In this document: piece after piece, positions 9,892-63,005 of the stretch
Layout of the letters: each line of letters opens with the position of its first letter
Numbering within the stretch: the stretch's first letter is position 1
Assembly (NCBI GenBank): GCA_904063045.1
Contig: CAJFCJ010000007.1
Span: 3,541,404-3,605,403 of the forward strand
Direction: 5' to 3'
Origin: Dimorphilus gyrociliatus
Lineage: Eukaryota > Animalia > Annelida
DNA: 64,000 nt
Translations under genes and position numbers: made by a program
The notes under the pieces: generated by a model
The model's database searches: none
The model's input: the letters and a program-made list of their open reading frames with translations, nothing else
What the model was told of the DNA's origin: nothing

Positions 9892-10011
9892 TCTACATAA
9901 CTAAATCCTATTTCAAGTACCCAATATGTTAATAATCAACTCCTCATAGTATGATGCGCCACTTTTATCGTCTTCGCTTTGCCTACACTTCCACTTTTTC
10001 AATAGCCTAAG

Positions 10012-23960: not shown

Positions 23961-26900
23961 CTAACTCTCCGTTTCGGCCTTTAATCCCTGACTTTTATGG
24001 AGTTCGTAGTAAAGTCCTTTGGCATTCATGAGTTGATGATGAGTGCCAGCTTCGGCAACTGAACCTCTATCGATTACGGCAATTTTATCAGCATTTTGTA
24101 CTGTTGAGAGTCTATGGGCAATTATAATGCAGGTTCTACCCTCTCTGGCCTTGTCAAGAGCATCTTGGACAACCTTTTCGCTCTCTGTGTCTAAAGCTGA
24201 CGTAGCTTCGTCAAGAAGTAATACTGTTTTTTAATGGGATAAAGAACAAAAACCGATTAAGGTACAAAACGCTATGGGAAGATTGATGGTAAACAGACCT
24301 GTTGGCTTTCGGATTAAGGCCCTAGCTATTGCTATTCGTTGTTTTTGGCCACCACTCAATTGGGTTCCTTTCTGACCAACGTTAGTCTCGTATTTTTCCG
24401 GCAACGATTCTATAAAATCGTGGATATTCGCTTGCTTTGCTGCTTCGATAATTAGCTCTTCTGATACATCTTTTTCTGACAATCCGTATTTAATATTCTC
24501 AGCAATAGACCGTCCAAATAGAATGGGCTCTTGCGTGACTATTGCCATTTTTGAGCGGACGTCGGAGACGCTTAGGTTTTTCATATTCTCTCCGTCAATT
24601 GCCTATGACAAGTAATAAAGATTTAGGGTAAATTTTCCTTATACTCATTTATCGTTATTTGATTTATATAAACTCACTATTAATCCTTTCTCTATTTCAT
24701 AAAACCTTTCGAGCAGTACTGTTATAGTTGATTTGCCAGCACCGGAACTGCCAACAAGGGCGATTGTAGTTCCAGGCGATATTTCTAGATTAAAATCTCG
24801 TAGAATTTTACTCTTGCTTCTCATTGGATAAGCAAAATCTATGCCTTTAAATGAGATTGCACCCCTAAAATTTTCCTACGGGTAGAGAGTACAACAACGT
24901 TTCATTAGTATATACAGTATTGTATACTTAGTTTACTTACCAGTTGTTTTCCAGCATTTTCCGAAACACCATCAATTAAGGGCACTCTATCTAACATTCT
25001 AAAGATCTTTTTCGCCGAAGTTTTAGCCTTTTTATATTCTATACTCATACCAGCAGACCTTCCAAGGGATGTTGCGCATACAGTAATTGTTATAGCTACC
25101 CTAAATATATCACCAAATTCTTGATCACCTATTTGAGATTGAAGAAATAAAATATATTGAATAAAAGTGGAAAATGATGATTCTTACCTATTTTAACAAG
25201 GTATGAGCCTATTGCAATAAGTCCACCAAAGCAAAAGTATTGTGCGCTAGTTGAAACTCCGTAAACAATACCAAACATAAGTGCTGTACGTTTCTCTTTT
25301 GTGTAGTCGCTTGTTACACCATCTTTAAATTTCTTTAAGAAATAACGTTCTTGCGATAACATTACTACAGTTTTTATCTGATTTAGAACTTCCGTTGCAA
25401 TCTGATTATATTGGAGAAGAAAAAGAAAAAGTTTGTAATTTTATCAGGGAAGGTGATGAGTACGGAATAGTAATATAATTAACCCTTTTGCAGTATAATT
25501 TAGAGAAGGTAATTAGGGGGAAAAAAACCTATTTTAATTATCTTTACTCACCGATTGAAGAGATTTAACAAAATCTTTCTTATGACGTTTATGCTTTGCA
25601 AAATTTGAACGTGACATGTACGTTTGTAATACGCCGGAAGATAGACTTAATGGTGCAAAAAGAAGAGCGAAAAGCGCTAATCTCCAACTATAATAAAATG
25701 CAATAGAGAGGGCGCACACTACCGTAGATACTGTGTATAGAAGTGTTCGAATATAATCGCCAAGTGCCTGTTCAATAAAATTGTGTTGCTATAAATATTG
25801 GAATTATTCGACCTAAAGACCTACTTTATGAACGTTGCCTGCCTCAGCAGCTAGCAGAGCGGTCAATGCACCAATACTATTGGTTGGTCTGTCGAACCAT
25901 CCAACTTCTTGCCTTAAGATACTCCTAAAAGTTAACTTTCTTAGACGTTCCGTAAGTCTTTCACCAGCAATTCCGAGCAAATAGACCTAAAGAGAATTAA
26001 TTTCATTAACGATCATTAAAACTATTCATTTTTTTACTAACAGCAAGCCAAGTGAACACTCCGTGAAGTAAAGCAATTAGCGCGAAAGCTAATGACAATC
26101 TTAGAGATTGTTCCTTCCTTTCATCCTTATCCAAAGTATCAAAATTCTGTTAATGGGATAATCGTATTAATTTTCGCTAAAACTTCATAATATTATTATC
26201 AATACTTACTGAAATTTGCTGACTAAGAGCAAGTGAGAAAACTGGCATAATGCATCCGTCAACAAGCGAAAAAAATCCTCCAAAACACAAATAGATAATC
26301 TCCGGTGAATTCAATTTCAGAAGTCTTAAAAATAATGATTTTCTCTTTTTTATAACCACTCCTGTATCGGTTTGACTACTATTTTCCGATATTTCCTCTA
26401 TGTCATCTTCGTCATCGGAATCATCAAGCTCTTGTAATTTTACATCATTTTCATGTATCATATCATCGTTAGTTAAATTCGTATCTACTACTGAATGGGT
26501 ATCCAGTTGATTTTTAATCAGTTGAGCGTATGCGCCGTCCTTCTCTAATAGTTCTTCGTGTGTGCCGTATTCGCATACTGAACCTTCATCTACTACATAA
26601 ATTCTATCGGCATTCCTAATAGTTGATAATCTATGAGCTATAACAATAGTTGTTCTATTCTTTGAAGCTCTATCAAGAGCCTCTTGAACAATTGCTTCAC
26701 TTTTGGCGTCTAGTGCCGAAGTTGCCTCGTCGAGGAGGAGAATTTCGGGCTTTCTAATTAAAGCTCTAGCAAGAGCGATTCTCTGTTTTTGACCACCCGA
26801 TAATTGAGTACCACTTTCACCGACCAACGTTTCATAACCATCAGGAAGGTTTGATACAAATTGATGAGCGTTAGCTAATCTTGCCGCTTCGATTATCTCA

Positions 26901-28653
26901 GATTCTGAGGCATCCGGTTTGCCCAGTGCAATATTCTCCATAATTGTTGTAGAAAACAACATAGGTTCCTGGGAAACGATACTTATTTGCTTCCTTAAAG
27001 ATTCAATATTGAGACTCTTAATACTTTTACTATCAATTCTAATATCACCACTTTTAAAGTTGTATAGTTTCATTAAAAGTTGTACAGTTGTACTCTTACC
27101 AGATCCACTTCGACCAACTAGAGCAACGGTTTGCTGAGGTTTAACGTGTATATTGAAATCCTTTAAAATTGGAATATCAGGTCTAGAAGGATATGAGAAA
27201 TGTACACCTTCTATTTCAATATTTCCATTAATATTCGTTAGTTTACTTCCGCTTGGATCGGCGTAATCAATTTCAGTTTCTTGGTCAATAATTTCAAATA
27301 CATTCGCCGCCGCTGCTTGAGCAATGGATATTTGCTGTAGGGATGGTAGACCATTTCCAAGGGCAATTACACCGACTAATATGCCAAATATGGTTGAGAT
27401 CATTTGTCCACCGTCAATAGTTCCATCATCGACCAGTTTATTACCATACCAAAATGGGAAAGCCATTGAACCCAGTGTTATTGTAAATTGTATACCCATG
27501 CCTAAACCGTTAACGAAAGCTTTTCTAATAGCTGTAGTCTTGGCAACAGATAATTTCTCTTCGTATTCATCGGAATGTTTTTTCTCTGCACCGAAAGCGA
27601 AAACAATACGAATTGCTCCAAAAGTTTCCGAAGCAATTGAACCAGCATGTCCATAGGCCTTTAACTCTTTTTGCGACATTTTCTTCATTGTCGACATAAG
27701 GACGACAATACTTGCCGCAATAATCGGAGACATAGCTAATACTATTAAACTCAATCGCCAACTTTGAGTAAAACCAATAACTAAACCGGTAGTAATTTGA
27801 GAAAAGGCTTGTAACAATGAACCAAGTTTGTGACCAACCGCGTCGGAAATTTCATCAATTTCCCTATAAAATAGAATTTATATGTTTATATAAGAAAATT
27901 CTAATAGGAATTAAAAAGAATACCCGAATAGTTTGGATGTAATTTCTCCAGTTTTATTATGATCGTACCATCCTTGATGCATTCTCATTAATTTATCAAA
28001 AGTTGCCATTCTAAGCTTTCTCTTTTGTTTTGCAGAGGTCAATTGCCAGAAGAACATTTGCATAAAACCAAGAAATAAGCATGTACAGGCAATTATCATT
28101 GAATAAGGTACAAGTGTCGTAACGATTTCATCGTGTATATCAAATCCAGAATCCGATGTATAATTAACGAATTTATTAATAGTTTGACTGTAGATAAGTA
28201 CATTTGCTGGAATGGCAACACCAACTGATAAACTTCCAAAAACTGCTAATAATACTAGCAATAGTTCACGACCAGTTAAATAGCGAAACTGCAAAGAGAG
28301 AACAGAGTTCAAAAAGTGTAACTAGTTCCTAGAAAACGGTATTGAAATCACTACATACAAGTTTAAAAAATGATACAGATTTCTTCGTCTTCTCTTTCCT
28401 ATCATCTTCGTTTTCAATTGGTTTATTAACCGAAAAAGATCTGTTTATATTTGAATGGAAAAAAGACAACAATTACATCAATTAAACCAAAGATAGAATT
28501 GATAGAATATATAAGGATAGAAAAGGATATATACACATTTTTAATACATTTAAATGAATCTTATAGATTGAATTTCGTATAGATTCTATATATTGTTCTA
28601 AGAGAAATAATAGAAATATCAATTTTTACGACTTACTTTCTCTTTGACTTCAT
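23961..28653 (-). CDS. ABCB1: Full-length ABCB (MDR/P-glycoprotein) transporter, TMD-NBD-TMD-NBD
   Basis: Two NBDs: GRSGSGKST and GSSGAGKST, both with [10 protein letters not shown] and [11 protein letters not shown]. Two transmembrane halves (GWYD and GWFD motifs) are joined by an acidic linker. Exons can be traced in frame from ATG 28653 to stop 23961. The exact vertebrate paralog cannot be assigned. Confidence 0.92.
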
Positions 28654-42160: not shown

Positions 42161-45100
42161 TTAAGGCCTTTCACTTCTAGGTCTCTTCACCTCAACTGTA
42201 ACACCGTCCATTTCTACTTTTTTACTCTTCTGTTCGCGATCTTCCCCTACAATTCTCTGCTTGTGCTCATCTTCCCATCGTTTCTGTTCCATTCTAACGC
42301 TCTTCTTTTGCTTTTCGGACATTTCTGTCCTTCTCTCGTCCAAAAGATGATTCACAATATCGTATATATCGTCTAATTTAGCGTCTCTTTCGTCAATGTC
42401 TACTTTAGTTAGAGCCATTGCTCGATTAATGGGGAAAAAATCAAAATTACCTCCCGATATCTAATTAAAAAGTGTTTTTAATGACAGAAATTTATTAATT
42501 TAGCGACTTAGAAATCAATTACAAACCTGATTATAAACATATAATTCCGTGTTTGTTAGATCGTTTTCGTCCGTTTCTCTAAGATGTATAAAATAGAATA
42601 TATAGGCCCACAGGTTATGCTCCTCTTTAACGTGATGTTCAAAAGTTGTAGAAGAGTTAGCAAACTCGTAACTCTGTCTACCGCAAATAAAGCAAAATGT
42701 TCTCATGTCTTGTTCCGCTTTCCACTAGTAGAGAAAATTAATTAATCAATTAATTAATTAATTAGACAGTTAGTTTATTGAATACCTTTAAATCCCTTAG
42801 TTCAGAAAATGTGTCGAGTATTATACCAAATATTATATTTAGCCCTATGGTTGTTATGATAATGTGAAAGATAATATGATAAGCGAATGTTGGACCGGCA
42901 GTTTGTATGTTAATTTCATCGGCATGTCTTGGTCTGAGATGTTCAGTTAATTCACCAATAAAACCAAATCTAATTATCGACAGTGTACATTGAGCTAAAT
43001 TTCGGCAGAAAAGATTTATGTCGCTATTTGGACTCATTTGCGATCTTAAGAATGCAAAGGCAACCAATGCAAACATATACATAATAAATATACCCAACAA
43101 GGCAACCAATAGCAGGGATCGACCTAAAGAAAATTAAGTGAATTATATAGGATATATTAATACAAATAACTATAATAACTGTTAAGAATAGATTAAAAAT
43201 AAAATGGCCAACAATGTATGAATGATTAGAAATAAAGGTGTTTCAAGGGGCGGGAGAAAAAGGGGGTGGAATCTTTAGATATTATTATTTATTGTTGTTG
43301 TTATAAATATCCTATTTTTCTTTTAAATCTCCCTATTTTGAAAGGGTGTGGTGTTTTCGTAGAAGTAAAAAAGAGCAAGCTATTATTTACCATTTCTAGT
43401 AACTGCTTCAATAACTCTCTGTAGCAATGGATTCCATAGTACTATATTAACTAGATGAAAGGCGAAAAAATAACCGTAGAATACAGTTCCGCATATTGAA
43501 AATGCCAAAAATGCTGTATAATATACTAGTTTAAAGCTGAATATATCGACTTCTAACAGAGATTGATGGGGTGGTTTCTCTTTTCTGTTATGTAACCTAT
43601 TTGTTAAGACAAAACAAACATTAAAATGATTGTTAAGATAGGAATAAATGTCCATTTTGTATAGTTTAATTACCCAATTTGGTACTTTAATCCGGCTACA
43701 GTTGGTAAACGTATTTGGTTGGATAGAAAGAAGGAGACAAAGACGAGTAAAGATAATAGATTGTGCACTCCTCCTAAAGCGTATATAACTATTTCAACCC
43801 ATTTGTCACGTACAGGAACAGGACTATATAAGTATATTTAATTAATAAAATCACTGATAAAAACTATAAGGTCAAGTATTCAAGTACTACTTACTCTGAT
43901 ATACCAATTGGTAGAGGTAAAGTTGGATCTGTTTCGTCATAGCTATTTCCAAGGAAACCTGCTGCTTTCCAAGTACTCAGCATAATAACGTTAATTATCA
44001 ATGAAACCAGTACACATAATTTATTCCAAACGAACCAGTTATTTATCAAAAAGGATGCAAAAGAAAAAGATTGCATCTTTCGTTGATAATAGATATCGTT
44101 TATTATATCCTTTGACCAATCCATTAACTCCCTGATTTTGTTCGATTGTGTATCTCTATTGATGTTCCATTTCAATTTCTCTTGCACCTCTTCCCTAAGG
44201 ACATTCTGTCAAATAGTAAAGAAAAATAAGGGTATTATTAAATGATAAGATATTTTAATTATAGCTCCAACCCTGTCTTTAACTCGAAATCTCGCTTTCT
44301 GTAAATTATCATCTTTAAGTATCTCAATACTTTCCGATTCTTTTGAATAAACTTGCCAAGCATCTTTCTTATAAGGAATTTGAATTTCCCTTTGAATTGC
44401 TAAACAAAAACATTGTTAAAGTATTAATTCTTCAATAAATATCTGCTAGATGGAATCTTGTTACCTTTAATTCTAAGGATTTCTTCAATTCTTTGAACGA
44501 TAAAGTAATATTTAAATCCGACTTCCAAATGTTCCTCCTTTTCATCCTGAGTCATTTTCTTCTTTTTCACTTTAACCTTACCAACCTCTTCGTCCAGAAT
44601 ACCTTTCTATTTTTTCGGAAAGAACAACACGGTTATTATTAAATATTATAATTCAAAGGTAATGAAAGATACTAACAGATGCTCTATATGAACAAACGGC
44701 GACTACTTCCAGTATCTCTTTATCCAGAGTTTCAGCAATTTCCTAAAAAGTAAGATATATTATACAAGACAAAGATAGAGATAGAGATTTTGAGATTATA
44801 ATCATCGTCTTCTCATTGAAACATACCTTAACTAACTCCTTTGTCGTTTCATGATTCTCTTCAATCATAGACATGATTAACTCTCCAATAATAGTTCTTA
44901 TAGCAATCGTTCTCTTATGGCCAAATTCTTTATATTTACCAGAACGTAATATATGATTTACAAAATCAACTATATTATTCGAATATATTACGTGATGGTT
45001 ATGTTCGTTACCCTATTGAAGTAATTTACGAATAATTGTAATTCATTAACTAATTAATTAATTAATTTATGCAAATATATTTCATTTTTTTTGTTGCTTA

Positions 45101-48100
45101 TTTACCGATGAGAATTCATTTAGGGTTGAGAAACACTGAATAATTAGGTCGATATTATTTTCATCAATAGCCGAATAAAGCATATTTAAAAAACTTGTAG
45201 TTTGAGCAATAAGATTAGCTGATTTAATGTTATCTTCTTGTTCTCTTAAGTAATTCTATTTAAATATTGAATTAATATTTATCATTTTAATATTCAATAA
45301 TGGTATTTTGTTAAAATTAATTAATTACTTGTAAAACTCTATTCTGTCCATCGCACATCCAAGCTAGCACCCTTAGCACCAATTCAATGTGTCCATCGTC
45401 TTTAATTTCAATATTTGTAACCTCACTTATAAGTTCGTGGTCAGCCTGTTCAGCGTCAAGGCTATCTGTATCATTCGTTGGTTTCTAACCAAATCGAATA
45501 AGCGCAAAATTAAAAATTCTCTTTATTCAAATAAATCATTAAATGAATAAATTGTAAAGAGATGTGCAGTGTTTATAGAAGCCAAGCAGTCATTTCAATA
45601 TAGAACAGCCATATTTTAGAAACAGAATTTGTAGATCAATTATTACCCATCTATTCTTTTGATAATCTTCGTCAGAGATTTCAAATATATCTAGAGTAGA
45701 TTGATAGACTTCCGGTTCCTCTATAGGAGCTGGACCAACTTTACTCAATCGTTTTTTTATCGAAGAGAAGCGTATCATTTCGAAATGATTACTTCCTTCG
45801 TTTGTAGTATCATTGCTCTCCCTTAACTTTTTTAGTATTTTAGGAATGAAATAAAGAAAAGATTGTTAATTGAAGCGTTAGATTTACAGTATATTAGTAC
45901 AGCGACTTTTTTAAATAAACTTACAGTCGTAATCTGTGTTTTTTGAAAGAAAATGATAAGTGAAATATACGTTGGAGAAGAGGGGTGGGAAGTGGGAAAA
46001 GGAAGAAGAAGAAGAAGAAGATTATATAACTAATAAAGAGGAAAAAGGCTTTGACATACCCCTGGTAATTCTTTCAGTTTTTGGGTACCCATCTTCAATG
46101 TTGTTGCTGTTTTCTTTTGTTCCCTGAGTTTCTCTTCACATTGGGCAGCCAATAGACGTCTAGATATAAGTTTCGTTAATCACATGTTCGTATGATAACA
46201 CTTAATAATTACCTTTCCCTAATTGTTATCATAGACTTTTGAATTTTATCTTTAATACAAAAAAAGAAAATCTCTTCTCTCGTATTCAAGAAATTATCTT
46301 CAAAAGCTGCTTGAGTAGATGGTGAACCGCTAAACAATAAGACAGATAAAAAGCACAAGTATTCTCTGCTAAGATCTTCATTTGATCTTTCCAAATGTTT
46401 GAGAGTCTTTGTTAAAGCACCTAATTTATTCAATTCATATTGAGTTTTGAAAATAATATCCAATTGATCTTTATGCTTTAATGGATTATCTTTCCAATTC
46501 TCTGGTAATTTTCTCTCTTCATTATGAATAATTCCTCTTAAGATTTGTAGGGCCCTTAAATCTAATCTTTCGATTTCGGGTTGAGACCTTTCCGAAGCTT
46601 TCATTTTATTCGCAGAAATACTGTTTATAATTTAACAATCGGATTAAATAAATTAATTCCCACTAATCCTGATTAATCTCTACACTACTTACAATAAATG
46701 ATCGATGAGCTTTGAAGTTCTTGAAAATTTCAATGACCAATCACTGGTAGAGTTATCAATGAAACAATGAATTAACAACTGAAATTCTTCGCCAAGAGGC
46801 AATTCTTCATCTCCGGCCACGGTAGTGTATTCTAAAGATTATATTAATACAACTTATAGTTATATTAGAAAATAGTAAGACGTAATGGAAAAGAGGATTC
46901 AACCTCTATTGGATGGATAGTCTAGTTGGTTTTCAACAGTGTTCTTTCCTTCCGTTAACTTTTTACAATTTAGAGCAAAAGCGTTTAACAACTTGTTCGT
47001 CTCTTGTTCATCTCTGTAATGTCTTCTATAAAGCTACAAATAGATATTCCGTTTACTTTCGTAATTAATACTTTAGAAAGGATATTATTGAACCTCTCTA
47101 GAGTCGTTTGATGCCATTTGCACTTCATCTACCATTCTTTTGTCCATAAAAGCGGCCAGTTGCTAATGTATAGTTTAATATAATTAATTATAGATAATCT
47201 CTTATTAAAAAGTCAAATTAGTTACTTCATTAGGTGCTTGAGATTTTTCAAAAACTGTTGCCAAACAACTCAATAAAACATCTCTATGATTCTTATTTGA
47301 CAAACAATCGTATATCGCATCGGTAAACTTCTATTTAATTCGTAATAGAGGAGATAAATTATCATTAATTAGAATATTACATGGTATAAAACTAGGTTAA
47401 AAGATAAAAAATAACGAACCAATAGTCCTTGGGTTAACTCATTTACAAGATTTATAGATATTCTCCTCTCAGCCGAGTAGATTTCGGAAAAGTAGATCTA
47501 TTAGTTAAAGTAAAATAAATGAATAAAAGAATTCCTTATAAATTAATAATTTACCTTCAAAAATGTCAGTACACCGTCAAAGAGATAATGACAACTTGCA
47601 TAGGCATAGTTATACTGGGGATCACCACCTTCCGGAAGTGCGCTAATCATTTTATATAAATACTTAGTATCAAAAAAATAATAGTAATAATTATAATAAA
47701 CGAAACAGACATAGAGAATAGCACTTCAAAACAAAATGAAACTAGTTTTATAACTAATTTATGATGTAATACTCATGCATAAAAACAAACAAACAAACAA
47801 TAAAAACTATAGAAAAGAGAGCGTCTTCTATATAGATTTTTATTCTTTTTTAGTGAACTTTAAACCATAAAAAGGCTAAGGTCCAAATTATAAAAGAGTA
47901 TAAGTGAATAAAATACTAATTAATCAAGGTAAAAAAAAGAGGGAATAGGTAAAAAAAAAGATGATAACCCAGTGGAAAAACAAACAAATTCATTTTAAAG
48001 ATAATAATCATAATCATCATAATCATCATCATCGTCGTCATCATCGTCGTCATTATTATTAAGCATAAATCTATAATCTTTATAACATTGACTTGATTGA

Positions 48101-48236
48101 TTTGATTGATTAATTTGATTGATTGATTTGTGGTTTATTTTTGAATAAATTAGACCTACTCTAACTAACCTTGTTAGAACTGCGCTGTTTTATTTTAAGG
48201 GTTTTTTTTTGTTTTTTTAAAAAAAAAATTAGTTTT

Positions 48237-48274
<38 letters not shown>

Positions 48275-51200
48275 TTTGTTTGTTTATATAAATCGAAAAC
48301 AATATGAGAGGATTTAAATGCTAAAGAGGCCTATTTACCTTGTTGATGGCGCCTTCTTTAGTAATTGTTTAGTAGAATTCTTATTAGATGAAACGTATGG
48401 AATAAGTCTTGTCATGGTACTTATAATGCTTCTGAACCATTCTTCTCTGTAGAATTAGATAGAAAATTGGAAATGGAAATAATATTTAAAAGAAAATTAC
48501 ATTTCTCCATCGTAGTCTCCCGAGGCAAATTCAGTTTCCGAGAAGGAACCGCCAGTATTTAGATATGCCCATAGAAGATAACGTACAAATGGTCTTTTTA
48601 AGTTAGTATCCACCTGTTCGTTGGTAACAACTGAAATTAACTCCCTAAATGGTAGGATGGTTTGACATAAGGATTCAATAAAACGGTTTTCTCCTTCACA
48701 ACAGGTGGCTAAAATGTCGACGAGGCTCATTAAATAGCTCAAATGTTGTTTGCCCATCTTTCCCATTAAAATTTGTAACCTTTCAGATTCTTCGTATTTA
48801 TCAAAAACGTAAGCGGCTCTTGAAAATCTTTGATTAAGATACTTGACAACATAATCTTGATTTCTTTTCAAAGGTAAATTCAATTCTTCAATTTTAATGA
48901 TTGCGGATAAAGCGTCTAAATATTCGGCGGCTTTCTCTTGATATTTCGCAGTCAAATCAACTATCTTTTGTATATGTAGTGGGTTGACCTTTAGGCAAGT
49001 AGTTTGATTTCCAACAAAAACTTCAGTAAGTGCCTCTGCAAGTTCCTTTTCGACACCTTTGATACGTAGCATAAAATCTAATCTTTGGAATATGAACGCT
49101 TGACCTTCTTCGTTTCCTTTAATCATAGCCTTTAATAACTTTAGAGCCCATCGGAAAACATCTCTTAAAGCTCCGTGATGATTCTCCTCCATTTGAACGT
49201 TATGTTGTAATATTTTAAGTACAATATCCATTACACCTAAGAGGGAAAGTGTACAATGTGTAATAGGAAATACTTAATTAATAAGAATAGTATGGTTCGA
49301 ACCGTTATTAGCTAAAATAATTTGATTCATAGTGTGGTGTTCTTCACAATCATTGACTAAATGGCACATACTGTTGTAAAAGAGCAAAGGTAAGAAAACA
49401 AAACTATACATTATGTATACATTTTAAACTTACTCGATTAATTGTTTTATTATTGCAACTGACTCGTCGGCCTGTTCATTACTCATCTTTGATCCGGCAT
49501 TCCTTCTTAATTTGGGTAGAATACCATCGATAATCTGATTTATCTGTATCGAATCATCTGTAAGTAAAACTTGAGCTTTTACAGCCTTTTCAAACAGATC
49601 GGCTTTCGCGGTGAAGAATTTGGTTAGCAGATGCATAGATTTTGTAATCATATCATCGTATTCGTACTTGGATAAATCAAGCATTATATCTCTAAAATCT
49701 TCCTTATCAAATACAGTTGTACTCTCCATAATCCTTTCAATCTCTTCCAAAATATCCGCTTTTAGGCTTAAAATGGAATTTACTGTAGTTTGTTAACTTT
49801 TTCAAAGTTCTATTTTAAACTTACTGCTGATCTTTTCTATTAATTCGTTTACTTTCCAACATTGAACTAAGTCTATTAGATTTTTGCTTTTTTAGACGCC
49901 TAAATAAGGCTATAAACTTTTCTAATCGAATGCTAAATTGAAAGGTTAGAAGAACGTCTACAACGTCCATTGCCGCTAATTTTGCTTGAACAATAGCATT
50001 CGTTTGAGCGCAAGGTTTATATCTCTCTTGCTTTTGATAGGCAAGTTTAGCTTCTTTATCTTTACCAACTATTGAATTAAATATAGGGTTAGAAAGTTAA
50101 TTAATGAATTCTAAGAATTTTCCATCACACCTGATTTAGGTGGACGATCATTTGTACCATCCATAAGGTCCATTAAACCCTCCCTTAACTTTTTTATGTC
50201 GCTAGCATCGTAAAATCCAAATTTTATTAAGTATTTAACAAGCTCCAAAACCTTTTTGAACGAAATAAAAAGTATCTATTTACTATTGATTTTAATAGAA
50301 GTATTAAATCCGTACCTGTTCAATGAGATTATTGCCACCAATATCGTCGAATGACATGCTACCATGTTCCTTAAGGAAACTCGCAATCCATCCTTGAAGA
50401 GATTGAATAATCTGTCTTTCATTATCCGATAGTCTTTCCAACTAAATTTAAATATTTATAAATAGATATAAAGTCTTATTAAGTAATGTTAACTTACGTT
50501 ATCCAGGTATTTCTTCATAATATCAGCACTATCGGAGACAACTTCATTGTAGACAAAAGTTAGTTTTGTTTGTTCAACAACCGAAGTATTATTGCCAACA
50601 TCGACAAATAACTTAATAATAAGATTGCAGTATTTCGCCCGAAGTTCAGCAGGCATTGCGGGATCTGTAAGACAAACGAAAGCCTCCTCCCAAGTTAGGA
50701 AGCGTCTTGATTTCGTTATAACTTCAATAGCGTGATGATTTCTTCCTTCGCACAATTTACCGAATAGTTCCAATTGTTTCTCAAGAAACATGTATTGATT
50801 ACTATCGTGAGTTACCTAGATAGAATAGATAGGAATAGTTGTAATAAGTAATAAATTAAATCTAACCTTAACAAAATCGGATAATTTCACCCAATCTTTA
50901 GCTTCACCAGTTTTCACGTAGACGATATTCTCGTTCTTCTTACTTGGTATATTAGTGGCAAGTTCTGTAAGAAATACGCCATCTTCGTTTTGAAGCCATT
51001 GATCTACAATAAATGATTGGTTTTCCGGAAGTGGAATACCATCACAAACGCTAATAACATTAAGATATTCAAGATAACGATAATTCTTAGTTGCTTGAAC
51101 TTTGTCAACAATTTCGCAAATCGTCTCTTTTGATATCCTCTCAACAATCTTTCTATTATCTCGAATTAGTTCGGCAATCATATCTAATGCATTATTACTT

Positions 51201-51992
51201 ATATTTCTATCGATTTGTCCATTTTCCAAATTTTCAAAGAACATTATATATTTAGCGAAATACAATTCATTCTTTCTACTATCGCCCTTTAAATAGTAGA
51301 GGAGAACTTCTAACATGGAACTCAAAACATCATTTATCTTCTTTTCATTAATCCTATATAAATGAATGAAGGTTGGTTTAAAAATCATTTGGAAAAAGTA
51401 TACAATCAAATCCAAAAGGTGTAAATTTCTCATTAATTTTTGTCTCTTTTTATCGGGAAGAGCGTTAACAATCATAAAATTTTTCATTTGAATAAGCGTC
51501 TAAAAGAGACAATTGAAATAATTAAAAAAAAATTCAAATAGACGCCTTTACTTTATTCGCCTTACCTGTTTTATATCATAAATTATAGCTACTGGAATAT
51601 TGGTTTGTGGATGCTGAGAAATCTATAATAAATTCATTATAGATATTGTAATGAATATTCAAATATTCAAAAAACCGTTTCAATGAAGGAAATTAAAACT
51701 GGGGCAAAACCACTGGCAATGTTAAAATCCTTTTTAGATGAATCAGAAACTTTTTGAAGAGTGAATGCGTCATCGTCCATTCTGACTTGCTCTACTCCCA
51801 ACTGTATAATAACAACAGTATTTCTTTTCATTCCTTCTTAACTAGAAACATATGACAAACTTCAAACTTACCTTTCTTAGATCGGCTCCGTCCCATTGTA
51901 ATTTACCTATTTCGTCTACAGCTAGTTTATCTTCGGGTTTGATAAATTTATCTATTTATAGAATAACGTTGTTAATATACAATAAATAATAA

Positions 51993-52027
<35 letters not shown>

Positions 52028-54189
52028 ATTGTACAGTATATAAAGGTTAATTACCTTTAAGAGCGTGTAACCACTTCCCAGAAACAGCATGTTTTATCCT
52101 AGCGTAGCTTTCAAATTCCGCTTCGTCCTTTTCCTGTATTATTAGAGGGGAGAGTAGTTTCATTAGTCGTAAACAATAGCTCTTCGTCTATATACCTGAG
52201 TAACCGGATAAAGAATAAAGACTGTTGAAGGAGTTGGAGATGGAACTAGAATCAATCCATTAAATAAATTATCCAAAGCCAAGTACATTTTCGTTGGTAG
52301 ATGACGGAATCTTATTGAATGTTCCCAAAGAATTTCACTGCCTATAATAATTGCATAAGTGTAATTATAGCGTCTCTGTATTTTGTTCTTTCTCTCCCCC
52401 TCTCTCTCTTCCCTAATTTATTCTCATACCGTATTGTAAGCCATTCTTGTGTTCAACTTGCCAATAAGTTATAGCCGATGTTGACGGAAACATTGTCTTT
52501 GGTTTGCTATTATCGATTGGCCTTAGTCTCATATGAACTTGAAGAAGAAGAAGAAGAAGGGTTTTTATAAAACTAATTCGAATATTCAATTATTCAATTA
52601 ATTAATTAATTACCCTGGTCAGGCTTCGAACCAGGAATAGGATTCATGTACAATCCATCGGAAACGACGTATGCTTCTAACTCTTTATGGAATAATCTCA
52701 CAAGGGAACCACCCTTATAAAAAAAAAAGGAATTCAGTTTTGACTGCAATTAAGATAAGATAATAAAGTTAATTTACCGTAATAACCGAAGAATTATTAT
52801 CGGAAGGTCGTTTAAATAAACCAATTACAAAACCGGTTTTACTCACTCCCAGATTAATTTCGCAACTGAGAAAAAAAAGATCATTTGGATAGAAAGAAGG
52901 AAAAAATAATTATAAAATGAATGAAATTTTAATATTCAAGTGAAAAATTTGAATAAATTATAAATACATTTTTGATCTGATAAAAGTATCTTGAAAAGCT
53001 GTGCTAGCGTGTAAAAATTGACCAGGAGATTTAACACTCTCCAATAAAACTTGATCAGAATCTTGTATAAGATCACCTTCGGATTTAACTTTAAATCTTG
53101 GCAAAATTTTAAATTGGGCATGTTTGTCATCAAAACCATATAACATTACCTATGGAAAAGAAGGGAGAATTATTGAAATTATTCAGAATGCATTATAATT
53201 AATTATCTATATATAATTAGTAAAATTAATAAGTTAGTTTACGAAAATGAGGGTCAAAATTATCAAATAAGCTGTTTTTTTGTTTTTTACGTACTTGCAT
53301 ACAATTTTTATCCCTTAAACTTGTTTTCGAGGTACTAATATGAACATAATTGTCGGTAAATATATGTTTTAACTGTATTATCTGCCCATATCTCAAACGC
53401 TGTCCATGAGCTCTCTGCTTTTCCTTTTCGTTATCTCTAGTCTCTGATAAGGCATCCGATCTTAATTTCTCAATGCTAACACCATCAGCCAATCTTTTCT
53501 TGCTCGACTGGGTTTGTCTATAGATTTTGTTTAGTTTGTATCGGTTTCTAGGACATATTTCGAACGTTATCGCTACAAAAGAAAAACATAGTAAACTTTA
53601 TTTTTATATTAAATATTGATATTTAAATCTCTAAATAATTAAGGCCTATATAAGAGGTTGAAGTAACTTTTACGACTTAAATAGACATCTTTCAATATAC
53701 TGCCATTTTTATCCGCGTTGGGTGTATTTACATTAGCCTATTGCCTATGTTGTTCATTCCGAGTATACCTTCGCCACAGGCATTCACCTATTTAATGAAT
53801 GAATAAGGGCAGGAAGAAATTATAATATTTCTCTTTTATAGGCCTATTTAGATAAACTAAGACTTTTACTATAAATACATTCTAGTTGTTCAATAAACGA
53901 ATATTGTTTCAATATTTTGAAATATAAATAAATTATGATGAAATTTTTACCTTGAGAATCGGGTATATCTTTAATATCGATGTAATCTTCCTTCTTTTGT
54001 TGATAGAACGTTTGAAGAGAATTATGAGCATTGCTTTATTTTTTATTAAAACAAACAAAACAGTTTTATAAATGAAACTCTAAGTAGTGATAGTTAAAAT
54101 GTATACCTGGAGGAAAAATTGAAGACGAAACCTGACCTATCCTCGCAAAAGAGATGAACAATATCCCCGTAACAAATATAACGAGCCAT
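42161..54189 (-). CDS. ITPR: Inositol 1,4,5-trisphosphate receptor-family Ca2+ channel, divergent; many exons
   Basis: N-terminal YICYGDIVHLF, LRYGQIIQLKH, FKILPRFKVKSEGD, GGSLVRLFH and RFRHLPT (trefoil/MIR domains); RQKLMR; RIH/armadillo blocks; a six-TM region; TTIGLNIIFGIILDTFSELR; the CFICG...HVKEEHNLW zinc finger; and a coiled-coil tail. I traced the N-terminal exons and several internal ones, but not every junction. Confidence 0.93.
48003..48130. repeat. Compound intronic repeat: (TCA/TCG)n followed by (TTGA)n
   Basis: Direct reading within an ITPR intron. Confidence 0.75.
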
Positions 54190-57147: not shown

Positions 57148-57304
57148 GAGCTCAAAAACTGATAATTATTATTATATCTTTAGTCGAATGTTAAGTAGCA
57201 ATAAACCGTTTAATTGAATATAAGAGCTGAAATCTTTATTGTTTAAATCGGATGTAGAATATAGCATCTATTTGGACGTTTGAACGAAAAACAATATTGT
57301 TCTC

Positions 57305-57307
<3 letters not shown>

Positions 57308-57341
<34 letters not shown>
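57308..57341. repeat. (CT)n microsatellite
   Basis: Direct reading. Confidence 0.9.
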
Positions 57342-57344
<3 letters not shown>

Positions 57345-57761
57345 AAAGAGGAGAGGTTAATCTTTCTAAAATAAAAAATCTATTATATCTTGGCAGAATG
57401 AAATAGAGAACTTTTTCTCTAGTTCTATTTTCTTAGGCCTATATTTGTGATTATTTTCTTCCTTTAAAAGTACATACGTATAGGGTTGGATTGTTCTAAA
57501 TATTTGGCCTAATTCCACAACTCGCCTGAACGCGACGGGTAAAAGTTGACTTAAGAATTGAATTCGCTCTTCTGTCTTAAACCTTGTTCAAACTTTACAA
57601 ATACGGCCTAGAACGACAGATGGCCTGAGAAGATAAAATAAGCGCCACCTACAAGTGGAAATTATAAATATTTTCTCTTTATTTCATTATTCTTTCCCGA
57701 ACTCGGTTAGAGAACATTAAACGGAAAGACGGAAAGATAGAAAAACGATGAAAGTTGTGAT

Positions 57762-60700: not shown

Positions 60701-62613
60701 TTGTCTTATTCAATTTTAGTCTTCTTTTTTTTATAATATTCTACCCAATCACAATACCCTTAGCCTCTAGTTTTTTTCACTCTATCCACAAATCTACTCC
60801 CCTTTCCCCCCCTCCCCCCTCCCTCGTCTTTTCCCCAAATTTTTCTTCCCTTCTCCCTCTAGTCCCTCTCTTTCTCTTATTTTAAACAGTTGCGCCGTCT
60901 AGCGGCACCGATTTCTCGACAGTCTTACGAGGCCATCCGGCCAATTTAATCGGATATAACTTTTTTTTGCCATTTACAAATTTGTGTTGTTTAAAGAGAT
61001 ATTTGGAAATTCATTTTTTTGGGTTATAAATCTTATTGGTTAATCCAAAAAGAGAGAGAGAAATAAGCTGAAAAATAGACGCCTAGAGTGATTATAGCTA
61101 TTTAGTAAAAAGAAAAAGGAAACAATAAACGAATCGAGAACTTGGAACGATTCAATTCACGCTTTCCGCCAGTCACGCTCCGTCGATATGTTCCTGTTTG
61201 TATATCGGAATATTGACGACGCCGGCGACGCCTTTTGAAAACGGAGCGTTTTTTTTTTTAGTTACAAATTAACAAGAGAAGCGTCGCTGGTATGCGTATG
61301 CTTTATATATTACTACTACTTTCAAGCCTGATAGGTAAGAGAAGTTTTCTGAAGGATTAGGGATAAAAAAGGAAATAGGGCAGTTGTAAATCGAGAGTTA
61401 TTCCTTTAAACCTTTAAATAAAAGATAGATAGACAGAATAAAAGAAGGAAAAAAAAAGCTTTGCCTCTTTATTTTTTCGTTTTATTGTCCAACTCGTTAT
61501 TTGTTTATTGCCTTCGGGATTGTTATCAGTCTCTATTTTACTCTTTATGTTTATACAGTGGTTTCGGATGGAGCTCTGTGGTCTGGACGCAAATGTTGTG
61601 AGCTATTCATTAGCAAATCATGCAGAAGATCTTGCGAGCAGGTAAGAGAATTTGTTATTACTTTTTTTTTTTTTTAAAGAAAAAGGTAGCTGAAAAAGAG
61701 TGGGGGGAGTAGTGAGAGGGAATTAGAACTTTTACTTGTACAAATAGTATTAGAAGGCGCGCGTTTATCGATCGTTTTGTTCGTTTAAGGTGGGAAAAAA
61801 AAGGGGGGGAAGTGGGTTGGCCGATTGACAGTAAGAGAGAAAGAAATAGAAAGAGAGAGAAAATAGAAGATTAAAGACATGAAAAGGATAGGATAGGTTA
61901 GATTGATAGGAAGGAGGAGGAAGGGAGGAAGGAAGGAAGGGAGGGGGTAGGGGCTATTTTTTTATAGGGAAAAATATGAACATAATATAGGTAGAAAATT
62001 CATCAAATATGATTAGAAATCGATAAAAACAAAGTATATTTAGAAGTAATAATTTACAGATAATAATAATAAAATATATAAATAAAAAAGTAAGAGTAAT
62101 ATGTTTGCGAGACGCACTATGGAAGTGAGAGATAACAGACCGACTTTACTTCATTAGCCAGGAAATGGCAGCCCTAAATTCTGTTATGTATCAACTATGC
62201 TTTTATCAAGGGCTATTTAGTCGTAAAAAGTTCAACACAGCCAAGTTTGATTTATGAAACTTGTTCAAAGTATTTGACTATCATTTCTCTTGTCGGTTTT
62301 GTCTCCTTCTTACTTTATTTTTTAATAATTAATAACGTTGATTTTCAAATATTGTTATCAATCTTGATAATCAATTTAACATAGGCTAACAAATTACACC
62401 AGACCACCCAGACAACATTTTTCTACCCCTTAGAACCTTCCAAATCTAGCTTTTTTTCTGTTTTTCTTTCTTTTCTACAGTATCCGACATGTTGAACGAT
62501 ATGTAAAGACATACACAGCTGCTATCATAACAGACGAACGTACGCGAGTCCCTTGTTCATACAAGTTCTGTTTAACTAAGATCGATGAGCGTTTTTCACT
62601 CATTCGCCCCTTT

Positions 62614-62650
<37 letters not shown>

Positions 62651-62967
62651 GTGGACACCTTAAATTTCTGTTTCGGTTTCTTATTACTTATTATTCTGTA
62701 AATTCTTTTCCTTATTAGATTCTTAATGTTTCCTAATTCTATATGTATAATCGACGTAATCGATTTCGTAATCCAAACATACATGTATACACAGCTTTTG
62801 TTTCTAATATGTACCTATGTGAATTTAGGCCTTTGTGCCCTTTCTCATTGTGCCCTATATTATACTTTATATAGGTATATAGATTATACTTTTCGTACCC
62901 ATTTTCCATTTCTATCCATTAGCAAATGCCTCTATCTGTCTCTCTCACTCTTTCGCTATTCCTCCAC

Positions 62968-63005
<38 letters not shown>

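What the first reader, a model, noticed from the sequence alone, without database searches (positions are those of the whole stretch)
42900..43050. IP3-receptor-family channel without the GGGVGD selectivity filter
Seen: inside one exon, the pore region reads FCRNLAQCTLSIIRFGFIGELTEHLRP. Established: canonical ITPRs read [23 protein letters not shown] and RyRs have GVRAGGGIGDE, so the GGG[VI]GD filter is nearly invariant. Aligning on the Cys, the Gly at +8 and the closing LR, this loop is 2 residues shorter and reads GFIGELTE. The luminal loop before it is also very short. S6 (LNIIFGIILDTFSELR) and the zinc finger are intact, which argues against a pseudogene. Inference: this is a non-canonical ITPR paralog, possibly of the divergent second 'IP3R-B-like' clade I recall from unicellular holozoans and some invertebrates, and its conductance or selectivity may differ.
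Basis: partly seen in the sequence, partly recalled or inferred. Interest (0 to 1): 0.8.

Follow-up and report, generated by a model that had tools for sequence, protein, structure and literature searches.

The report
IP3R-B type channel, short pore filter
This gene of the tiny marine worm Dimorphilus gyrociliatus encodes an intact, expressed member of the little-studied "IP3R-B" branch of calcium-release channels, and its unusual short pore filter is a conserved hallmark of that whole invertebrate branch, not a defect of this one gene.

Summary
On the minus strand, one exon (43123-42786) reads FCRNLAQCTLSIIRFGFIGELTEHLRP. HMMER aligns GFI--GELTE to GLRNGGGVGD of human ITPR3, a 2-residue deletion. 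S6 and the zinc finger are intact.

The window is Dimorphilus gyrociliatus (a neighbouring gene is 100% DgyrCDS6502). I modelled the gene as 40 exons and 2518 aa, colinear end to end with ITPR-like proteins.

- It is transcribed and spliced, and an RNA contig from another sample covers the whole pore loop.
- A sister-species contig keeps the motif, with dN/dS about 0.06.
- No alternative GGGxGD exon exists in the window.

The motif is a clade trait. Of 364 family sequences, 96 share GxxG[DE]xx[DE] and 148 share GGGxG[DE]. Trees place the gene (100/99) inside a spiralian subclade of a GGG-less clade of Placozoa and Bilateria. That clade groups with Capsaspora CAOG_04510 and stands apart from canonical ITPRs (AU p = 7.5e-9). 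This matches the published IP3R-B family, which vertebrates, flies and nematodes lack and whose physiology is unknown.

The IP3 pocket and the Ca2+ sensor also carry family-wide substitutions. Conductance is untested. This is a new member of a known but uncharacterised family. The scan also noted another ITPR-sized gene 2 Mb upstream, not examined.

The parts
42161..54189 (-). Whole gene: 40 coding exons, 2518 aa, an IP3R-B-type channel of Dimorphilus gyrociliatus
   Evidence: The model was built by homolog-guided dynamic programming plus RNA joints, and the N-terminus was corrected by hand. It is colinear over its full length with Owenia P0166 (40% identity), Lingula P0163 (38%), DgyrCDS5116 (37%) and Trichoplax P0271 (35%). 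Pfam domains on its exons: Ins145_P3_rec, MIR, RIH twice, RIH_assoc, Ion_trans.
42786..43123 (-). Pore exon (exon 38, aa 2241-2353): S5, short luminal loop, pore helix, filter, S6
   Evidence: Pfam Ion_trans 9e-8. Best PDB sequence match ITPR3 6e-9, RyR about 1e-3. AlphaFold2 model mean pLDDT 88.6. Foldseek top matches are the human IP3R3 and RyR1 pore domains, TM 0.70-0.75. The 3' splice donor at 42786 is inferred from homolog alignment, not from RNA.
43050..43118 (-). S5 helix (exon residues 2-24)
   Evidence: DSSP helix 2-24 in the model. Aligns to ITPR3 residues 2187-2215.
42999..43049 (-). Very short S5-to-pore-helix luminal loop (about 17 residues, against about 60 in human ITPR3)
   Evidence: The same short loop is present in all non-canonical relatives: their channel segments are about 277 aa, against 315-360 aa in canonical metazoan ITPRs.
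42960..42998 (-). Pore helix NLAQCTLSIIRFG(F)
   Evidence: DSSP helix 42-54, pLDDT about 93. C39, C45 and G53 are invariant in the 78-sequence alignment A1.
42942..42965 (-). Filter motif GFIGELTE (aa 2294-2301), standing in place of GLRxGGG[VI]GD
   Evidence: Alignments. 96 of 364 family sequences share GxxG[DE]xx[DE]. The motif is identical in the sister-species contig L001 and is covered by RNA contig X1.
42789..42908 (-). S6 helix with the gate-region motif TTIGLNIIFGIILDTFSELRDLK
   Evidence: DSSP helix 72-111. G99, D103, F105 and R109 are invariant across the family. Alignment.
42527..42724 (-). Exon 39: linker with the C2H2 zinc finger CFICG...FEHHVKEEHN
   Evidence: Translation. Aligned to canonical CFICG...FEEH..EHN. 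81% identical in L001.
42161..42460 (-). Exon 40: C-terminal charged, coiled-coil-like tail and stop codon
   Evidence: Homolog HSPs reach 42245-42215. 67% identical in L001.
45341..45358 (-). First Ca2+-sensor motif: MCDGQN in place of LCENHN (Glu to Asp)
   Evidence: Alignment. MCDGQ[NH] is shared by the metazoan B-type sequences aligned. Capsaspora and Salpingoeca keep CEG.
45106..45123 (-). Second Ca2+-sensor motif: LNEFSS(G) in place of LTEYCQG (Glu kept), inside RIH_assoc
   Evidence: Pfam RIH_assoc 1.5e-12 on this exon.
52509..52535 (-). IP3-pocket beta-trefoil strand: HMRLRPIDN in place of VFLRTTGRQ
   Evidence: MAFFT with ITPR1 N-termini that carry RTTGR at 265. R265 is kept; T266, T267, G268 and R269 read P, I, D and N. 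The B-family consensus is VH[LM]R[IV]RxVDQ.
51269..51445 (-). IP3-pocket ARM1 residues: KKRQKLMR (R504K; R506, K508 and R511 kept) and DSRKN (Y567S; R568 and K569 kept)
   Evidence: phmmer alignment to mouse/rat ITPR1 structures 5xa0 and 3jav, residues 497-658.
45925..45933 (-). 9-nt micro-exon (ITT) used in one of two main-isoform contigs
   Evidence: table 5c: the letters AGTCGTAAT lie between the joint sides 45484 and 46060. The gene-model programme found the same exon independently.
45647..45826 (-). Alternative cassette exon (60 aa, linker before ARM3)
   Evidence: Joint 45484|45647 in one X2 contig (depth 145), against the skipping joint 45484|46060 (depth 647). Open frame.
44206..48338 (-). 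Stretch holding the 11 introns confirmed by spliced contigs, all GT..AG on the minus strand
   Evidence: Joints: 48339|47642, 47555|47497, 47420|47330, 47226|47162, 47094|47033, 46904|46831, 46693|46620, 46213|46159, 46060|45933, 45925|45484, 44272|44205.

Best explanation
The window holds a real, expressed and selectively constrained gene of the annelid Dimorphilus gyrociliatus. It encodes a 2518-aa member of the IP3R/RyR superfamily. The protein belongs to the IP3R-B family (spiralian subclade 'B1'), not to the canonical IP3 receptors.

The shortened pore loop (pore helix, then F-I-G-E-L-T-E) is this clade's own conserved filter design. It has two acidic positions three residues apart, G-[DE]-x-x-[DE], in place of the GGG[VI]GD glycine ladder.

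Shown here: gene identity, intactness, expression, purifying selection, clade-wide conservation of the motif, and an IP3R/RyR-like fold of S5, pore helix and S6.

Inferred: it assembles as a tetrameric ER cation channel. The S6 gate region, the zinc-finger linker and most of the Ca2+ sensor (Asp and Glu) are kept. The two rings of carboxylates probably still attract and pass cations including Ca2+, with conductance and selectivity that differ from ITPR and RyR.

Also inferred: it is probably not gated by IP3 in the canonical way, because half of the IP3 pocket is replaced by a different, family-conserved motif. Activation by Ca2+ or an unknown ligand is more likely.
For: Identity and organism:
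- The GRB14-like ORF in the window is 100% identical to DgyrCDS6502.
- Domains are Ins145_P3_rec, MIR, two RIH, RIH_assoc and Ion_trans.
- The model is colinear over its full length with ITPR-like proteins.

A working gene:
- 11 GT..AG introns are confirmed by spliced contigs, and an RNA contig covers the pore loop.
- Against sister-species contig L001: 349 codons, dN 0.098, dS 1.66, ratio 0.06, filter identical.

A clade trait:
- The census is 96 GxxG[DE]xx[DE], 148 GGGxG[DE] and 120 other short forms.

Placement:
- B1 subclade 100/100* and 100/99*; GGG-less metazoan clade 100/99*; canonical clade 100/100 excludes the gene. AU p = 7.5e-9.
- Literature on the IP3RB family: 10.1101/2020.08.17.254631.

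Fold:
- pLDDT 88.6; helices at residues 2-24, 42-54 and 72-111, with only 3 non-helical residues before a short helical turn after the pore helix. Top Foldseek hits are IP3R3 and RyR1 pores.

Gate, zinc finger and Ca2+ sensor are aligned, and the IP3 pocket.

Single substitutions in GGGXGDX change conductance in IP3R and RyR (PMC2995152). A rebuilt loop should therefore matter.
Against: - No functional data exist for any metazoan IP3R-B, so conduction, selectivity, ligand and location are all inference.
- The monomer model cannot show pore radius or which side chains face the axis.
- R265, K508, R511, R568 and K569 are retained, so weak or altered inositol-phosphate binding is not excluded.
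- This paralog sits on a long branch (1.12 against a median of 0.43). It also differs from the B1 consensus (GLIGD[LM]FE) at several filter positions, so it may behave differently from its relatives.
- The equation of Capsaspora CAOG_04510 with the published CO.IP3R-B, and the report that CO.IP3R-B does not bind IP3, rest on my memory of Alzayady et al. 2015. That paper was not held.
- Its annotated protein did not appear in the protein searches, although two paralogs did.
Confidence: 0.72

Rival explanations
1. It is a functionally ordinary IP3-gated Ca2+ release channel. The filter variant is tolerated and changes little.
For: - The full ITPR domain set is present.
- R265, R506, K508, R511, R568 and K569 of the IP3 pocket are kept.
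- One Ca2+-sensor Glu is kept and the other is Asp.
- The S6 gate region and zinc finger are conserved.
- The terminal acid of the filter is kept.
Against: - K249, T266, T267, G268, R269 and Y567 are replaced, and by a different motif conserved across the whole B family. That points to another specificity, not to drift.
- The filter is 2 residues shorter with no glycine ladder, whereas even single substitutions in GGGXGDX change conductance (PMC2995152).
- The same genome is reported to hold a separate IP3 receptor gene, which I take to be canonical (note s1-080423, not verified here).
- From memory, Capsaspora IP3R-B neither bound IP3 nor released Ca2+ (Alzayady 2015).
Confidence: 0.13
2. It is a non-conducting or modulatory subunit. 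It would be a scaffold, or a partner that co-assembles with the other B-type paralogs and tunes their pore.
For: - D. gyrociliatus has at least two more B-type genes, DgyrCDS5116 and DgyrCDS2578, and another ITPR-sized gene 2 Mb upstream (note s1-082899).
- This copy is the fastest-evolving one.
Against: - The pore helix, filter and S6 are the best conserved part against the sister species (93% identity).
- The family-invariant S6 residues are kept.
- Such constraint on pore-lining residues is what a conducting pore would show.
Confidence: 0.1
3. It is a decaying pseudogene or a relic copy.
For: - It sits on a long branch.
- Its annotated protein was not retrieved in two protein searches.
Against: - 40 exons give an uninterrupted 2518-aa frame.
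- Spliced transcripts exist.
- dN/dS is 0.06 with near-saturated synonymous sites.
- The only RNA-against-genome change in the pore exon is synonymous.
Confidence: 0.03
4. It is an artefact: a local mis-assembly, or a missed alternative exon that restores GGGVGD.
For: The IP3 receptor gene of this genome is reported to use either/or exons, including a pore-lining helix (note s1-080423, unchecked).
Against: - The same sequence is seen in an independent RNA library and in a sister species' genomic contig.
- The flanking introns are only 267 and 61 nt.
- No frame of the window encodes a pore-like GGGxG[DE], and canonical pore queries hit only this exon.
- About a hundred relatives have the same loop length.
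Confidence: 0.02

Closest known systems
IP3R-B (IP3RB) family of intracellular channels (Alzayady et al. 2015, Mol Biol Evol 32:2236, from memory; Heath-Heckman et al., bioRxiv 10.1101/2020.08.17.254631, read)
   Same: - The gene groups with B-type proteins of Lottia, Saccoglossus, annelids, Trichoplax and Capsaspora CAOG_04510.
- It has ITPR size and domain set.
- The family is absent from vertebrates, Drosophila and C. elegans according to the paper, and no such sequence is among the listed hits.
- Lophotrochozoans have two subclades (B1, B2), matching the two IP3RB genes of leech.
   Different: - This is an extra, fast-evolving B1-type copy in D. gyrociliatus, beside DgyrCDS5116.
- Its filter reads GFIGELTE where the B1 consensus is GLIGD[LM]FE.
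- I found no description of the family's filter motif in the papers I could read.
Canonical IP3 receptors (ITPR1-3, invertebrate itpr; the IP3R-A family)
   Same: - Overall architecture is shared: suppressor and IP3-binding region, two RIH, RIH_assoc, 6-TM channel and C2H2 zinc finger.
- The pore-domain fold is shared (TM 0.71-0.75 to human IP3R3).
- The S6 motif LN.IFG.I.DTF..LR is shared.
   Different: - No GGG[VI]GD; the pore loop is 2 residues shorter.
- The luminal loop is about 17 residues against about 60.
- K249, T266, T267, G268, R269 and Y567 of the IP3 pocket are replaced.
- LCENHN becomes MCDGQN.
- The clade is separate (AU p = 7.5e-9).
Ryanodine receptors
   Same: - Same superfamily and same pore fold (TM 0.70-0.74).
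- In the trees the one RyR-sized sequence (P0045) and the B group lie together on the non-canonical side (94/77; the split of this side from the canonical and kinetoplastid sequences has 100/98).
   Different: - About 2500 aa against about 5000.
- The model is colinear with about 2500-aa ITPR-like proteins, which leaves no room for the extra RyR-specific modules. I did not scan the middle exons specifically for SPRY or RyR repeats.
- RyR keeps GGGIG[DE].
- The pore exon scores 1e-3 to RyR against 6e-9 to ITPR3.

Membership tests
IP3R/RyR superfamily | N-terminal Ins145_P3_rec and MIR beta-trefoils, two RIH domains and RIH_assoc | tested here: met
   Pfam: Ins145_P3_rec 2.8e-11 and 4.9e-6; MIR weak, below its cut-off (3.7e-4 and 2e-3); RIH 1.8e-21 and 8.1e-9; RIH_assoc 1.5e-12.
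IP3R/RyR superfamily | C-terminal 6-TM channel with pore helix and S6 motif, followed by a C2H2 zinc finger | tested here: met
   Ion_trans 9e-8. PDB sequence hits are only ITPR and RyR. The model matches IP3R3 and RyR1 pores. CFICG...HH..EH is aligned.
Canonical ITPR (IP3R-A) | GGG[VI]GD selectivity-filter motif after the pore helix | tested here: not met
   The gene reads GFIGELTE with a 2-residue deletion. There is no alternative exon with the motif.
Canonical ITPR (IP3R-A) | Full set of IP3-coordinating residues (R265, T266, T267, G268, R269, R504, K508, R511, Y567, R568, K569) | tested here: not met
   Kept: R265, K508, R511, R568, K569 (R504 becomes K). Replaced: T266P, T267I, G268D, R269N, Y567S, and also K249A. 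The residue list is from established ITPR1 literature (own knowledge).
Canonical ITPR (IP3R-A) | Phylogenetic placement inside the clade of animal ITPRs | tested here: not met
   The canonical clade (100/100) excludes the gene. The constrained tree is 91 log-likelihood units worse, p-AU 7.5e-9. The canonical sequences used were C-terminal fragments only.
IP3R-B | Groups with the non-vertebrate ITPR-like clade that includes the Capsaspora, Lottia and Saccoglossus B-type proteins | tested here: met
   B1 subclade 100/100*; 30-row metazoan clade 100/99*; 47-row clade with Capsaspora CAOG_04510 100/98*. B1 and the 30-row clade are recovered without the filter columns. Caveat: I could not check the published accession numbers, because Alzayady 2015 was not held.
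IP3R-B | Family absent from vertebrates, Drosophila and C. elegans | tested here: met
   The 120 best relatives of the Lingula B-type channel domain are molluscs, annelids, nemerteans, brachiopods, flatworms, hemichordates, an acoel, Trichoplax, sponges, choanoflagellates and a few unnamed environmental sequences. None is from those groups. Only the best 120 of 162 were listed.
IP3R-B | No IP3 binding and no IP3-evoked Ca2+ release (reported for Capsaspora IP3R-B) | not testable with these tools
   Sequence only. The pocket is half replaced. The published result is recalled from memory.
Ryanodine receptor | About 5000 aa with SPRY and RyR-repeat insertions, and a GGGIGDE filter | tested here: not met
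   The protein is 2518 aa and colinear with about 2500-aa ITPR-like proteins. Only about 1000 residues align to the RyR-sized P0045, at 24% identity. The filter differs. The middle exons were not each scanned against Pfam for SPRY or RyR repeats.

The most novel reading that the evidence does not exclude
IP3R-B proteins may not be IP3 receptors with a blemish. They may be a third, functionally distinct class of giant intracellular channel. It would have its own filter design (a short loop with two stacked acidic rings, G-[DE]-x-x-[DE]) and its own conserved ligand pocket (VH[LM]R[IV]RxVDQ in place of FLRTTGRQ). It would be gated by Ca2+ or an unidentified messenger, and its selectivity or conductance would differ from both ITPR and RyR. 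D. gyrociliatus, with three or more such genes in a 74-Mb genome, would be a compact system to find out what they do.
Probability: 0.3. Interest if true: 0.75.

Novelty: new member of a known kind. Interest (0 to 1): 0.42.

Why it matters
Public annotation calls about a hundred invertebrate proteins of this clade "inositol 1,4,5-trisphosphate receptor type 1/2/3-like". All of them lack the filter motif that defines ITPR and RyR permeation, and half of the IP3 pocket is replaced in the relatives I aligned. Anyone who transfers ITPR function to them, in molluscs, annelids, hemichordates or placozoans, may be wrong.

The family is old, probably pre-metazoan. It was lost in vertebrates, flies and nematodes, and no physiology is known for it. 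One member marks touch neurons in leech.

The conserved G-[DE]-x-x-[DE] loop gives a concrete, testable handle: filter swaps, electrophysiology and structure. These could show how this superfamily builds a pore without the glycine ladder. For this particular gene the result is mostly a correct filing, not a discovery.

Tried and rejected
- Literature. Alzayady et al. 2015 is not held, and my first guess at its PMC id was another paper. Searches for 'IP3R-B' mostly hit 'IP3R-binding protein'. No readable paper describes the IP3R-B filter.
- Organism. I first suspected a placozoan, from GC 32%, a compact genome and the coral sample. Trichoplax TRIADDRAFT_55241 is only 35-45% identical, so I rejected that. 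The organism was settled as D. gyrociliatus.
- Gene model. The first automatic models contained false exons inside the 696-nt intron, a read-through at the pore exon's donor, and a missed exon 2. I corrected them with RNA joints and homolog alignment. The tail of exon 32 (..SKSLSLSLS) may still run a few codons into a TC repeat. Two joints reported at 47644 and 44401 were 2 nt off because of AG ambiguity. One search was an empty script.
- The gene's own annotated protein was not found. It was absent, so I could not pass a full-length reference to the tools and worked exon by exon.
- A tetramer pore model is not possible with the single-chain tool. Only the monomer of the pore exon was folded.
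- Foldseek E-values are weak (2.7e-3) because the query is 112 residues of helix. TM-scores and the identity of the hits carry the argument.
- Deep order among the sponge, choanoflagellate and Capsaspora groups is unresolved. One ancient loss of GGG (2 state changes) against several losses (3 changes) cannot be decided.
Full report
**1. What is at the site**

The gene lies on the minus strand. The stop-free frame 43133-42765 reads ...GRSLLLVALLGIFIMYMFALVAFAFLRSQMSPNSDINLFCRNLAQCTLSIIRFGFIGELTEHLRPRHADEINIQTAGPTFAYHIIFHIIITTIGLNIIFGIILDTFSELRDLK....

phmmer against all PDB sequences finds only IP3 receptors and ryanodine receptors: ITPR3 at 6e-9, ITPR2 at 3.5e-7, ITPR1 at 2.7e-4 and RyR at about 1e-3. 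It aligns 'siirfgfi..geltehlrp' to 'TVMNHGLRngGGVGDILRK' of human ITPR3. So:
- The loop is two residues shorter.
- The glycine ladder is gone.
- Only the last acidic residue is kept, as Glu.
- The S5-to-pore-helix loop is about 17 residues where ITPR3 has about 60.

The S6 motif and the CFICG...HH..EH zinc finger are intact.

**2. The gene and the organism**

A neighbouring GRB14-like ORF (15014-16432, minus strand) is 100% identical to DgyrCDS6502 of Dimorphilus gyrociliatus, on a 4.62-Mb scaffold. Earlier scan note s1-080423 had named that species, and this confirms it. The compact 73.8-Mb genome is described in PMC7854359, and the window's 40-90-nt introns fit it.

I built a gene model with a homolog-guided dynamic programme and corrected it with RNA evidence and by hand. 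The result is 40 exons, 54189-42161, 2518 aa, with no internal stop.

The model is colinear end to end with:
- Owenia P0166 (40% identity)
- Lingula P0163 (38%)
- DgyrCDS2578 (38%)
- DgyrCDS5116 (37%)
- Trichoplax TRIADDRAFT_55241 (35%)
- Capsaspora CAOG_04510 (29%)

Only about 1000 residues align to a RyR-sized protein, at 24%. Pfam finds Ins145_P3_rec, MIR (weak), RIH twice, RIH_assoc and Ion_trans on the exons.

**3. Is it a live gene, and could the site be an artefact?**

Expression:
- Contigs of run X2 (kind not on record; 'organism A') skip ten intervals, all with GT..AG ends on the minus strand. They include a 9-nt micro-exon and an alternative 180-nt cassette exon. X2 is therefore a transcriptome.
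- Run X1, a coral metatranscriptome from another study, adds a spliced joint at 44272|44205. It also has a 152-nt contig over 42864-43015, with no indel and one changed letter.
- That contig covers exon residues 37-85, which is the whole pore helix and filter. The change (42894) is a synonymous GGT to GGC.

Constraint:
- A genomic contig of a related species (L001, Logan ERR14224706) carries the orthologous last four exons.
- Over 349 codons, dN = 0.098 and dS = 1.66, a ratio of about 0.06.
- IIRFGFIGELTEHLRPRH is identical in both species, although synonymous sites are nearly saturated.

Alternative exon:
- The introns flanking the pore exon are 267 and 61 nt.
- No frame of the window encodes a pore-like GGGxG[DE].
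- Canonical ITPR and RyR pore queries hit only this exon.

The pseudogene, mis-assembly and missed-exon explanations are therefore very unlikely.

**4. The motif is a clade trait**

An exhaustive HMMER search with the pore exon gave 912 relatives at E <= 1e-3. Many of the best ones read RYGLIGDLFE, RYGLVGDYDE, RFGFIGELFE or RYGAVGELTE at the same place, with the same loop length.

A word search with the channel domain of the Lingula relative returned about 110 named proteins. They come from molluscs, annelids, nemerteans, brachiopods, the flatworm Macrostomum, hemichordates, an acoel, Trichoplax, sponges and choanoflagellates. Nearly all are annotated as 'ITPR type 1/2/3-like'. Their filters fall into groups:

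| Group | Filter reading |
|---|---|
| B1 | [VI]IRYGLIGD[LM]FE |
| B2 | IHHG[FL]V[DE]xxYTTFE |
| Hemichordates | VRFGLIDGLQE |
| Trichoplax | IRVGFLSGFHE |
| Capsaspora | NFGLENGLAS |
| Oscarella and choanoflagellates | GLLSGGGLGEAL (GGG kept) |

A census of 364 family sequences gives 148 GGGxG[DE], 96 GxxG[DE]xx[DE] (this gene's type) and 120 other short forms.

**5. Phylogeny**

I fetched canonical channel-domain fragments with a Sphaeroforma query. They come from vertebrates, insects, a spider, a coral, an annelid, a cuttlefish and a rotifer.

An IQ-TREE analysis (LG+C20) of 66 channel domains and 271 columns shows:
- A canonical ITPR clade at 100/100.
- On the other side, the one RyR-sized sequence, plus a 47-row clade (100/98*) holding Corallochytrium, sponges, choanoflagellates and Capsaspora CAOG_04510.
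- Within that clade, a 30-row clade of Placozoa and Bilateria without GGG (100/99*).
- Within that, the lophotrochozoan subclades B2 and B1. The window's protein sits inside B1 (100/100*).

Removing the filter columns changes none of this. Forcing the protein into the canonical clade costs 91 log-likelihood units (p-AU 7.5e-9).

The presence of GGG changes state 2 or 3 times on these trees. That means one loss at or before the base of the placozoan-bilaterian clade. Whether Capsaspora and Amphimedon share that loss is unresolved.

This topology, the member taxa and the missing taxa match the IP3RB family. Heath-Heckman et al. describe it, citing Alzayady et al. 2015:
- It was lost in vertebrates and is absent from Drosophila and C. 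elegans.
- Leech has two copies.
- Its physiology is unknown.
- One copy is enriched in touch neurons.

D. gyrociliatus thus has at least this gene, DgyrCDS5116 (B1) and DgyrCDS2578 (B2). According to unchecked scan notes it also has another ITPR-sized gene 2 Mb upstream, an IP3 receptor gene that I take to be canonical, and a RyR. This copy has the longest branch in B1 (1.12 against a median of 0.43). Whether it is an old B1 paralog or a fast dinophilid duplicate is open.

**6. How it probably works**

Shown by modelling:
- AlphaFold2 on the pore exon with a 78-sequence alignment gives pLDDT 88.6. The model has S5 (residues 2-24), a pore helix (42-54) and S6 (72-111).
- After the pore helix come only three non-helical residues (I-G-E) and then a short helical turn.
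- The best structural matches are the pore domains of human IP3R3 (TM 0.71-0.75) and RyR1.
- The family-invariant residues are all present: C39, C45, G53, and the S6 residues G99, D103, F105 and R109.

Inferred about the pore:
- Across B1 the loop keeps two acidic positions three apart, G-[DE]-x-x-[DE]. Here they are E2298 and E2301.
- In a tetramer that would give two rings of carboxylates at the luminal mouth. I infer a cation-conducting, probably Ca2+-permeable pore built differently from the GGG[VI]GD filter.
- Even single substitutions in that motif change conductance in IP3R and RyR (PMC2995152). Different conductance or selectivity is therefore likely, but untested.

Inferred about gating:
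- The Ca2+-sensor motifs read MCDGQN (Glu to Asp, in all metazoan B-type sequences aligned) and LNEFSSG (Glu kept). Ca2+ regulation is therefore plausible.
- In the IP3 pocket, R265, R506, K508, R511, R568 and K569 are kept.
- K249, T266, T267, G268, R269 and Y567 are replaced.
- The replacement on the beta-trefoil side is itself a conserved B-family motif, VH[LM]R[IV]RxVDQ. It is present even in the sponge and choanoflagellate members that keep GGG.
- This argues for a different or absent ligand, not for decay. It agrees with my recollection that Capsaspora IP3R-B did not bind IP3.

**7. Comparison and verdict**

The gene meets the defining features of the IP3R/RyR superfamily. It fails three defining features of canonical ITPRs (filter, IP3 residue set, clade) and lacks the size and filter of RyRs. 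It passes the phylogenetic and taxonomic tests for IP3R-B.

It is a new member of a known but functionally uncharacterised family.

I found no readable paper that describes the family's filter motif. I could not read the founding paper, so I do not claim the motif as new. Interest is moderate. It lies less in this gene than in the fact that a large, widely mis-labelled invertebrate channel family has a different pore and pocket and no known function.

Noticed in passing
window 45484-46060: Alternative splicing occurs in the linker before ARM3. The main form joins 46060 to 45484 directly or through a 9-nt micro-exon (45925-45933, encoding ITT). A minor form includes a 180-nt cassette exon (45647-45826), and one contig runs unspliced from 45647 to 45987.
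   Followed up: partly
window 47643-48338: One intron is far longer (696 nt) than its 40-90-nt neighbours. It holds a low-complexity Asp/Asn-rich open frame. A separate X2 contig lies over 47615-48000 (depth 38), with loose ends at 47925 and 47959 that match nothing in the gene region. This may be intron retention or an unrelated transcript.
   Followed up: no
window 42161-54189 (whole gene): The gene's own annotated protein did not turn up in the exhaustive representative search or the word search. Two paralogs of the same genome did (DgyrCDS5116, DgyrCDS2578). The public annotation of this locus may be missing, split or outside the length limits.
   Followed up: partly
L001:1-1809 (Logan ERR14224706): A genomic contig of a close relative of D. 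gyrociliatus (75-87% DNA identity) carries the last four exons of the ortholog, with introns at the same places. A GRB14-like protein 85% identical to the window's (P0400, Logan) also points to a sequenced relative.
   Followed up: partly
window 14832-16432 (minus): A GRB7/10/14-type adaptor gene (RA, PH, BPS, SH2), identical to DgyrCDS6502. Nearly all of it is in one 473-codon exon.
   Followed up: partly
window 23964-28321 (minus): A multi-exon ABCB-type (P-glycoprotein-like) full transporter with two nucleotide-binding domains. It was seen only in the open-frame listing.
   Followed up: no
window 8519-9900 (minus): A protein kinase gene with an AMPK/SIK/MARK-like catalytic domain, followed by a long Ser/Pro-rich exon (6414-7355). 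It was seen only in the open-frame listing.
   Followed up: no
(proteins P0222-P0270): The second lophotrochozoan subclade (B2) has yet another conserved pore loop, IHHG[FL]V[DE]xxYTTFE, with a His-His pair at the end of the pore helix. The family therefore explored at least two filter designs after losing GGG.
   Followed up: partly
window 57239-57432, 62478-63082 and elsewhere: Frequent (GA)n/(TC)n microsatellites lie in intergenic and intronic DNA. They read as ERERER or SLSLSL in open frames. One probably inflates the 3' end of my exon 32 (about 44766-44800).
   Followed up: no
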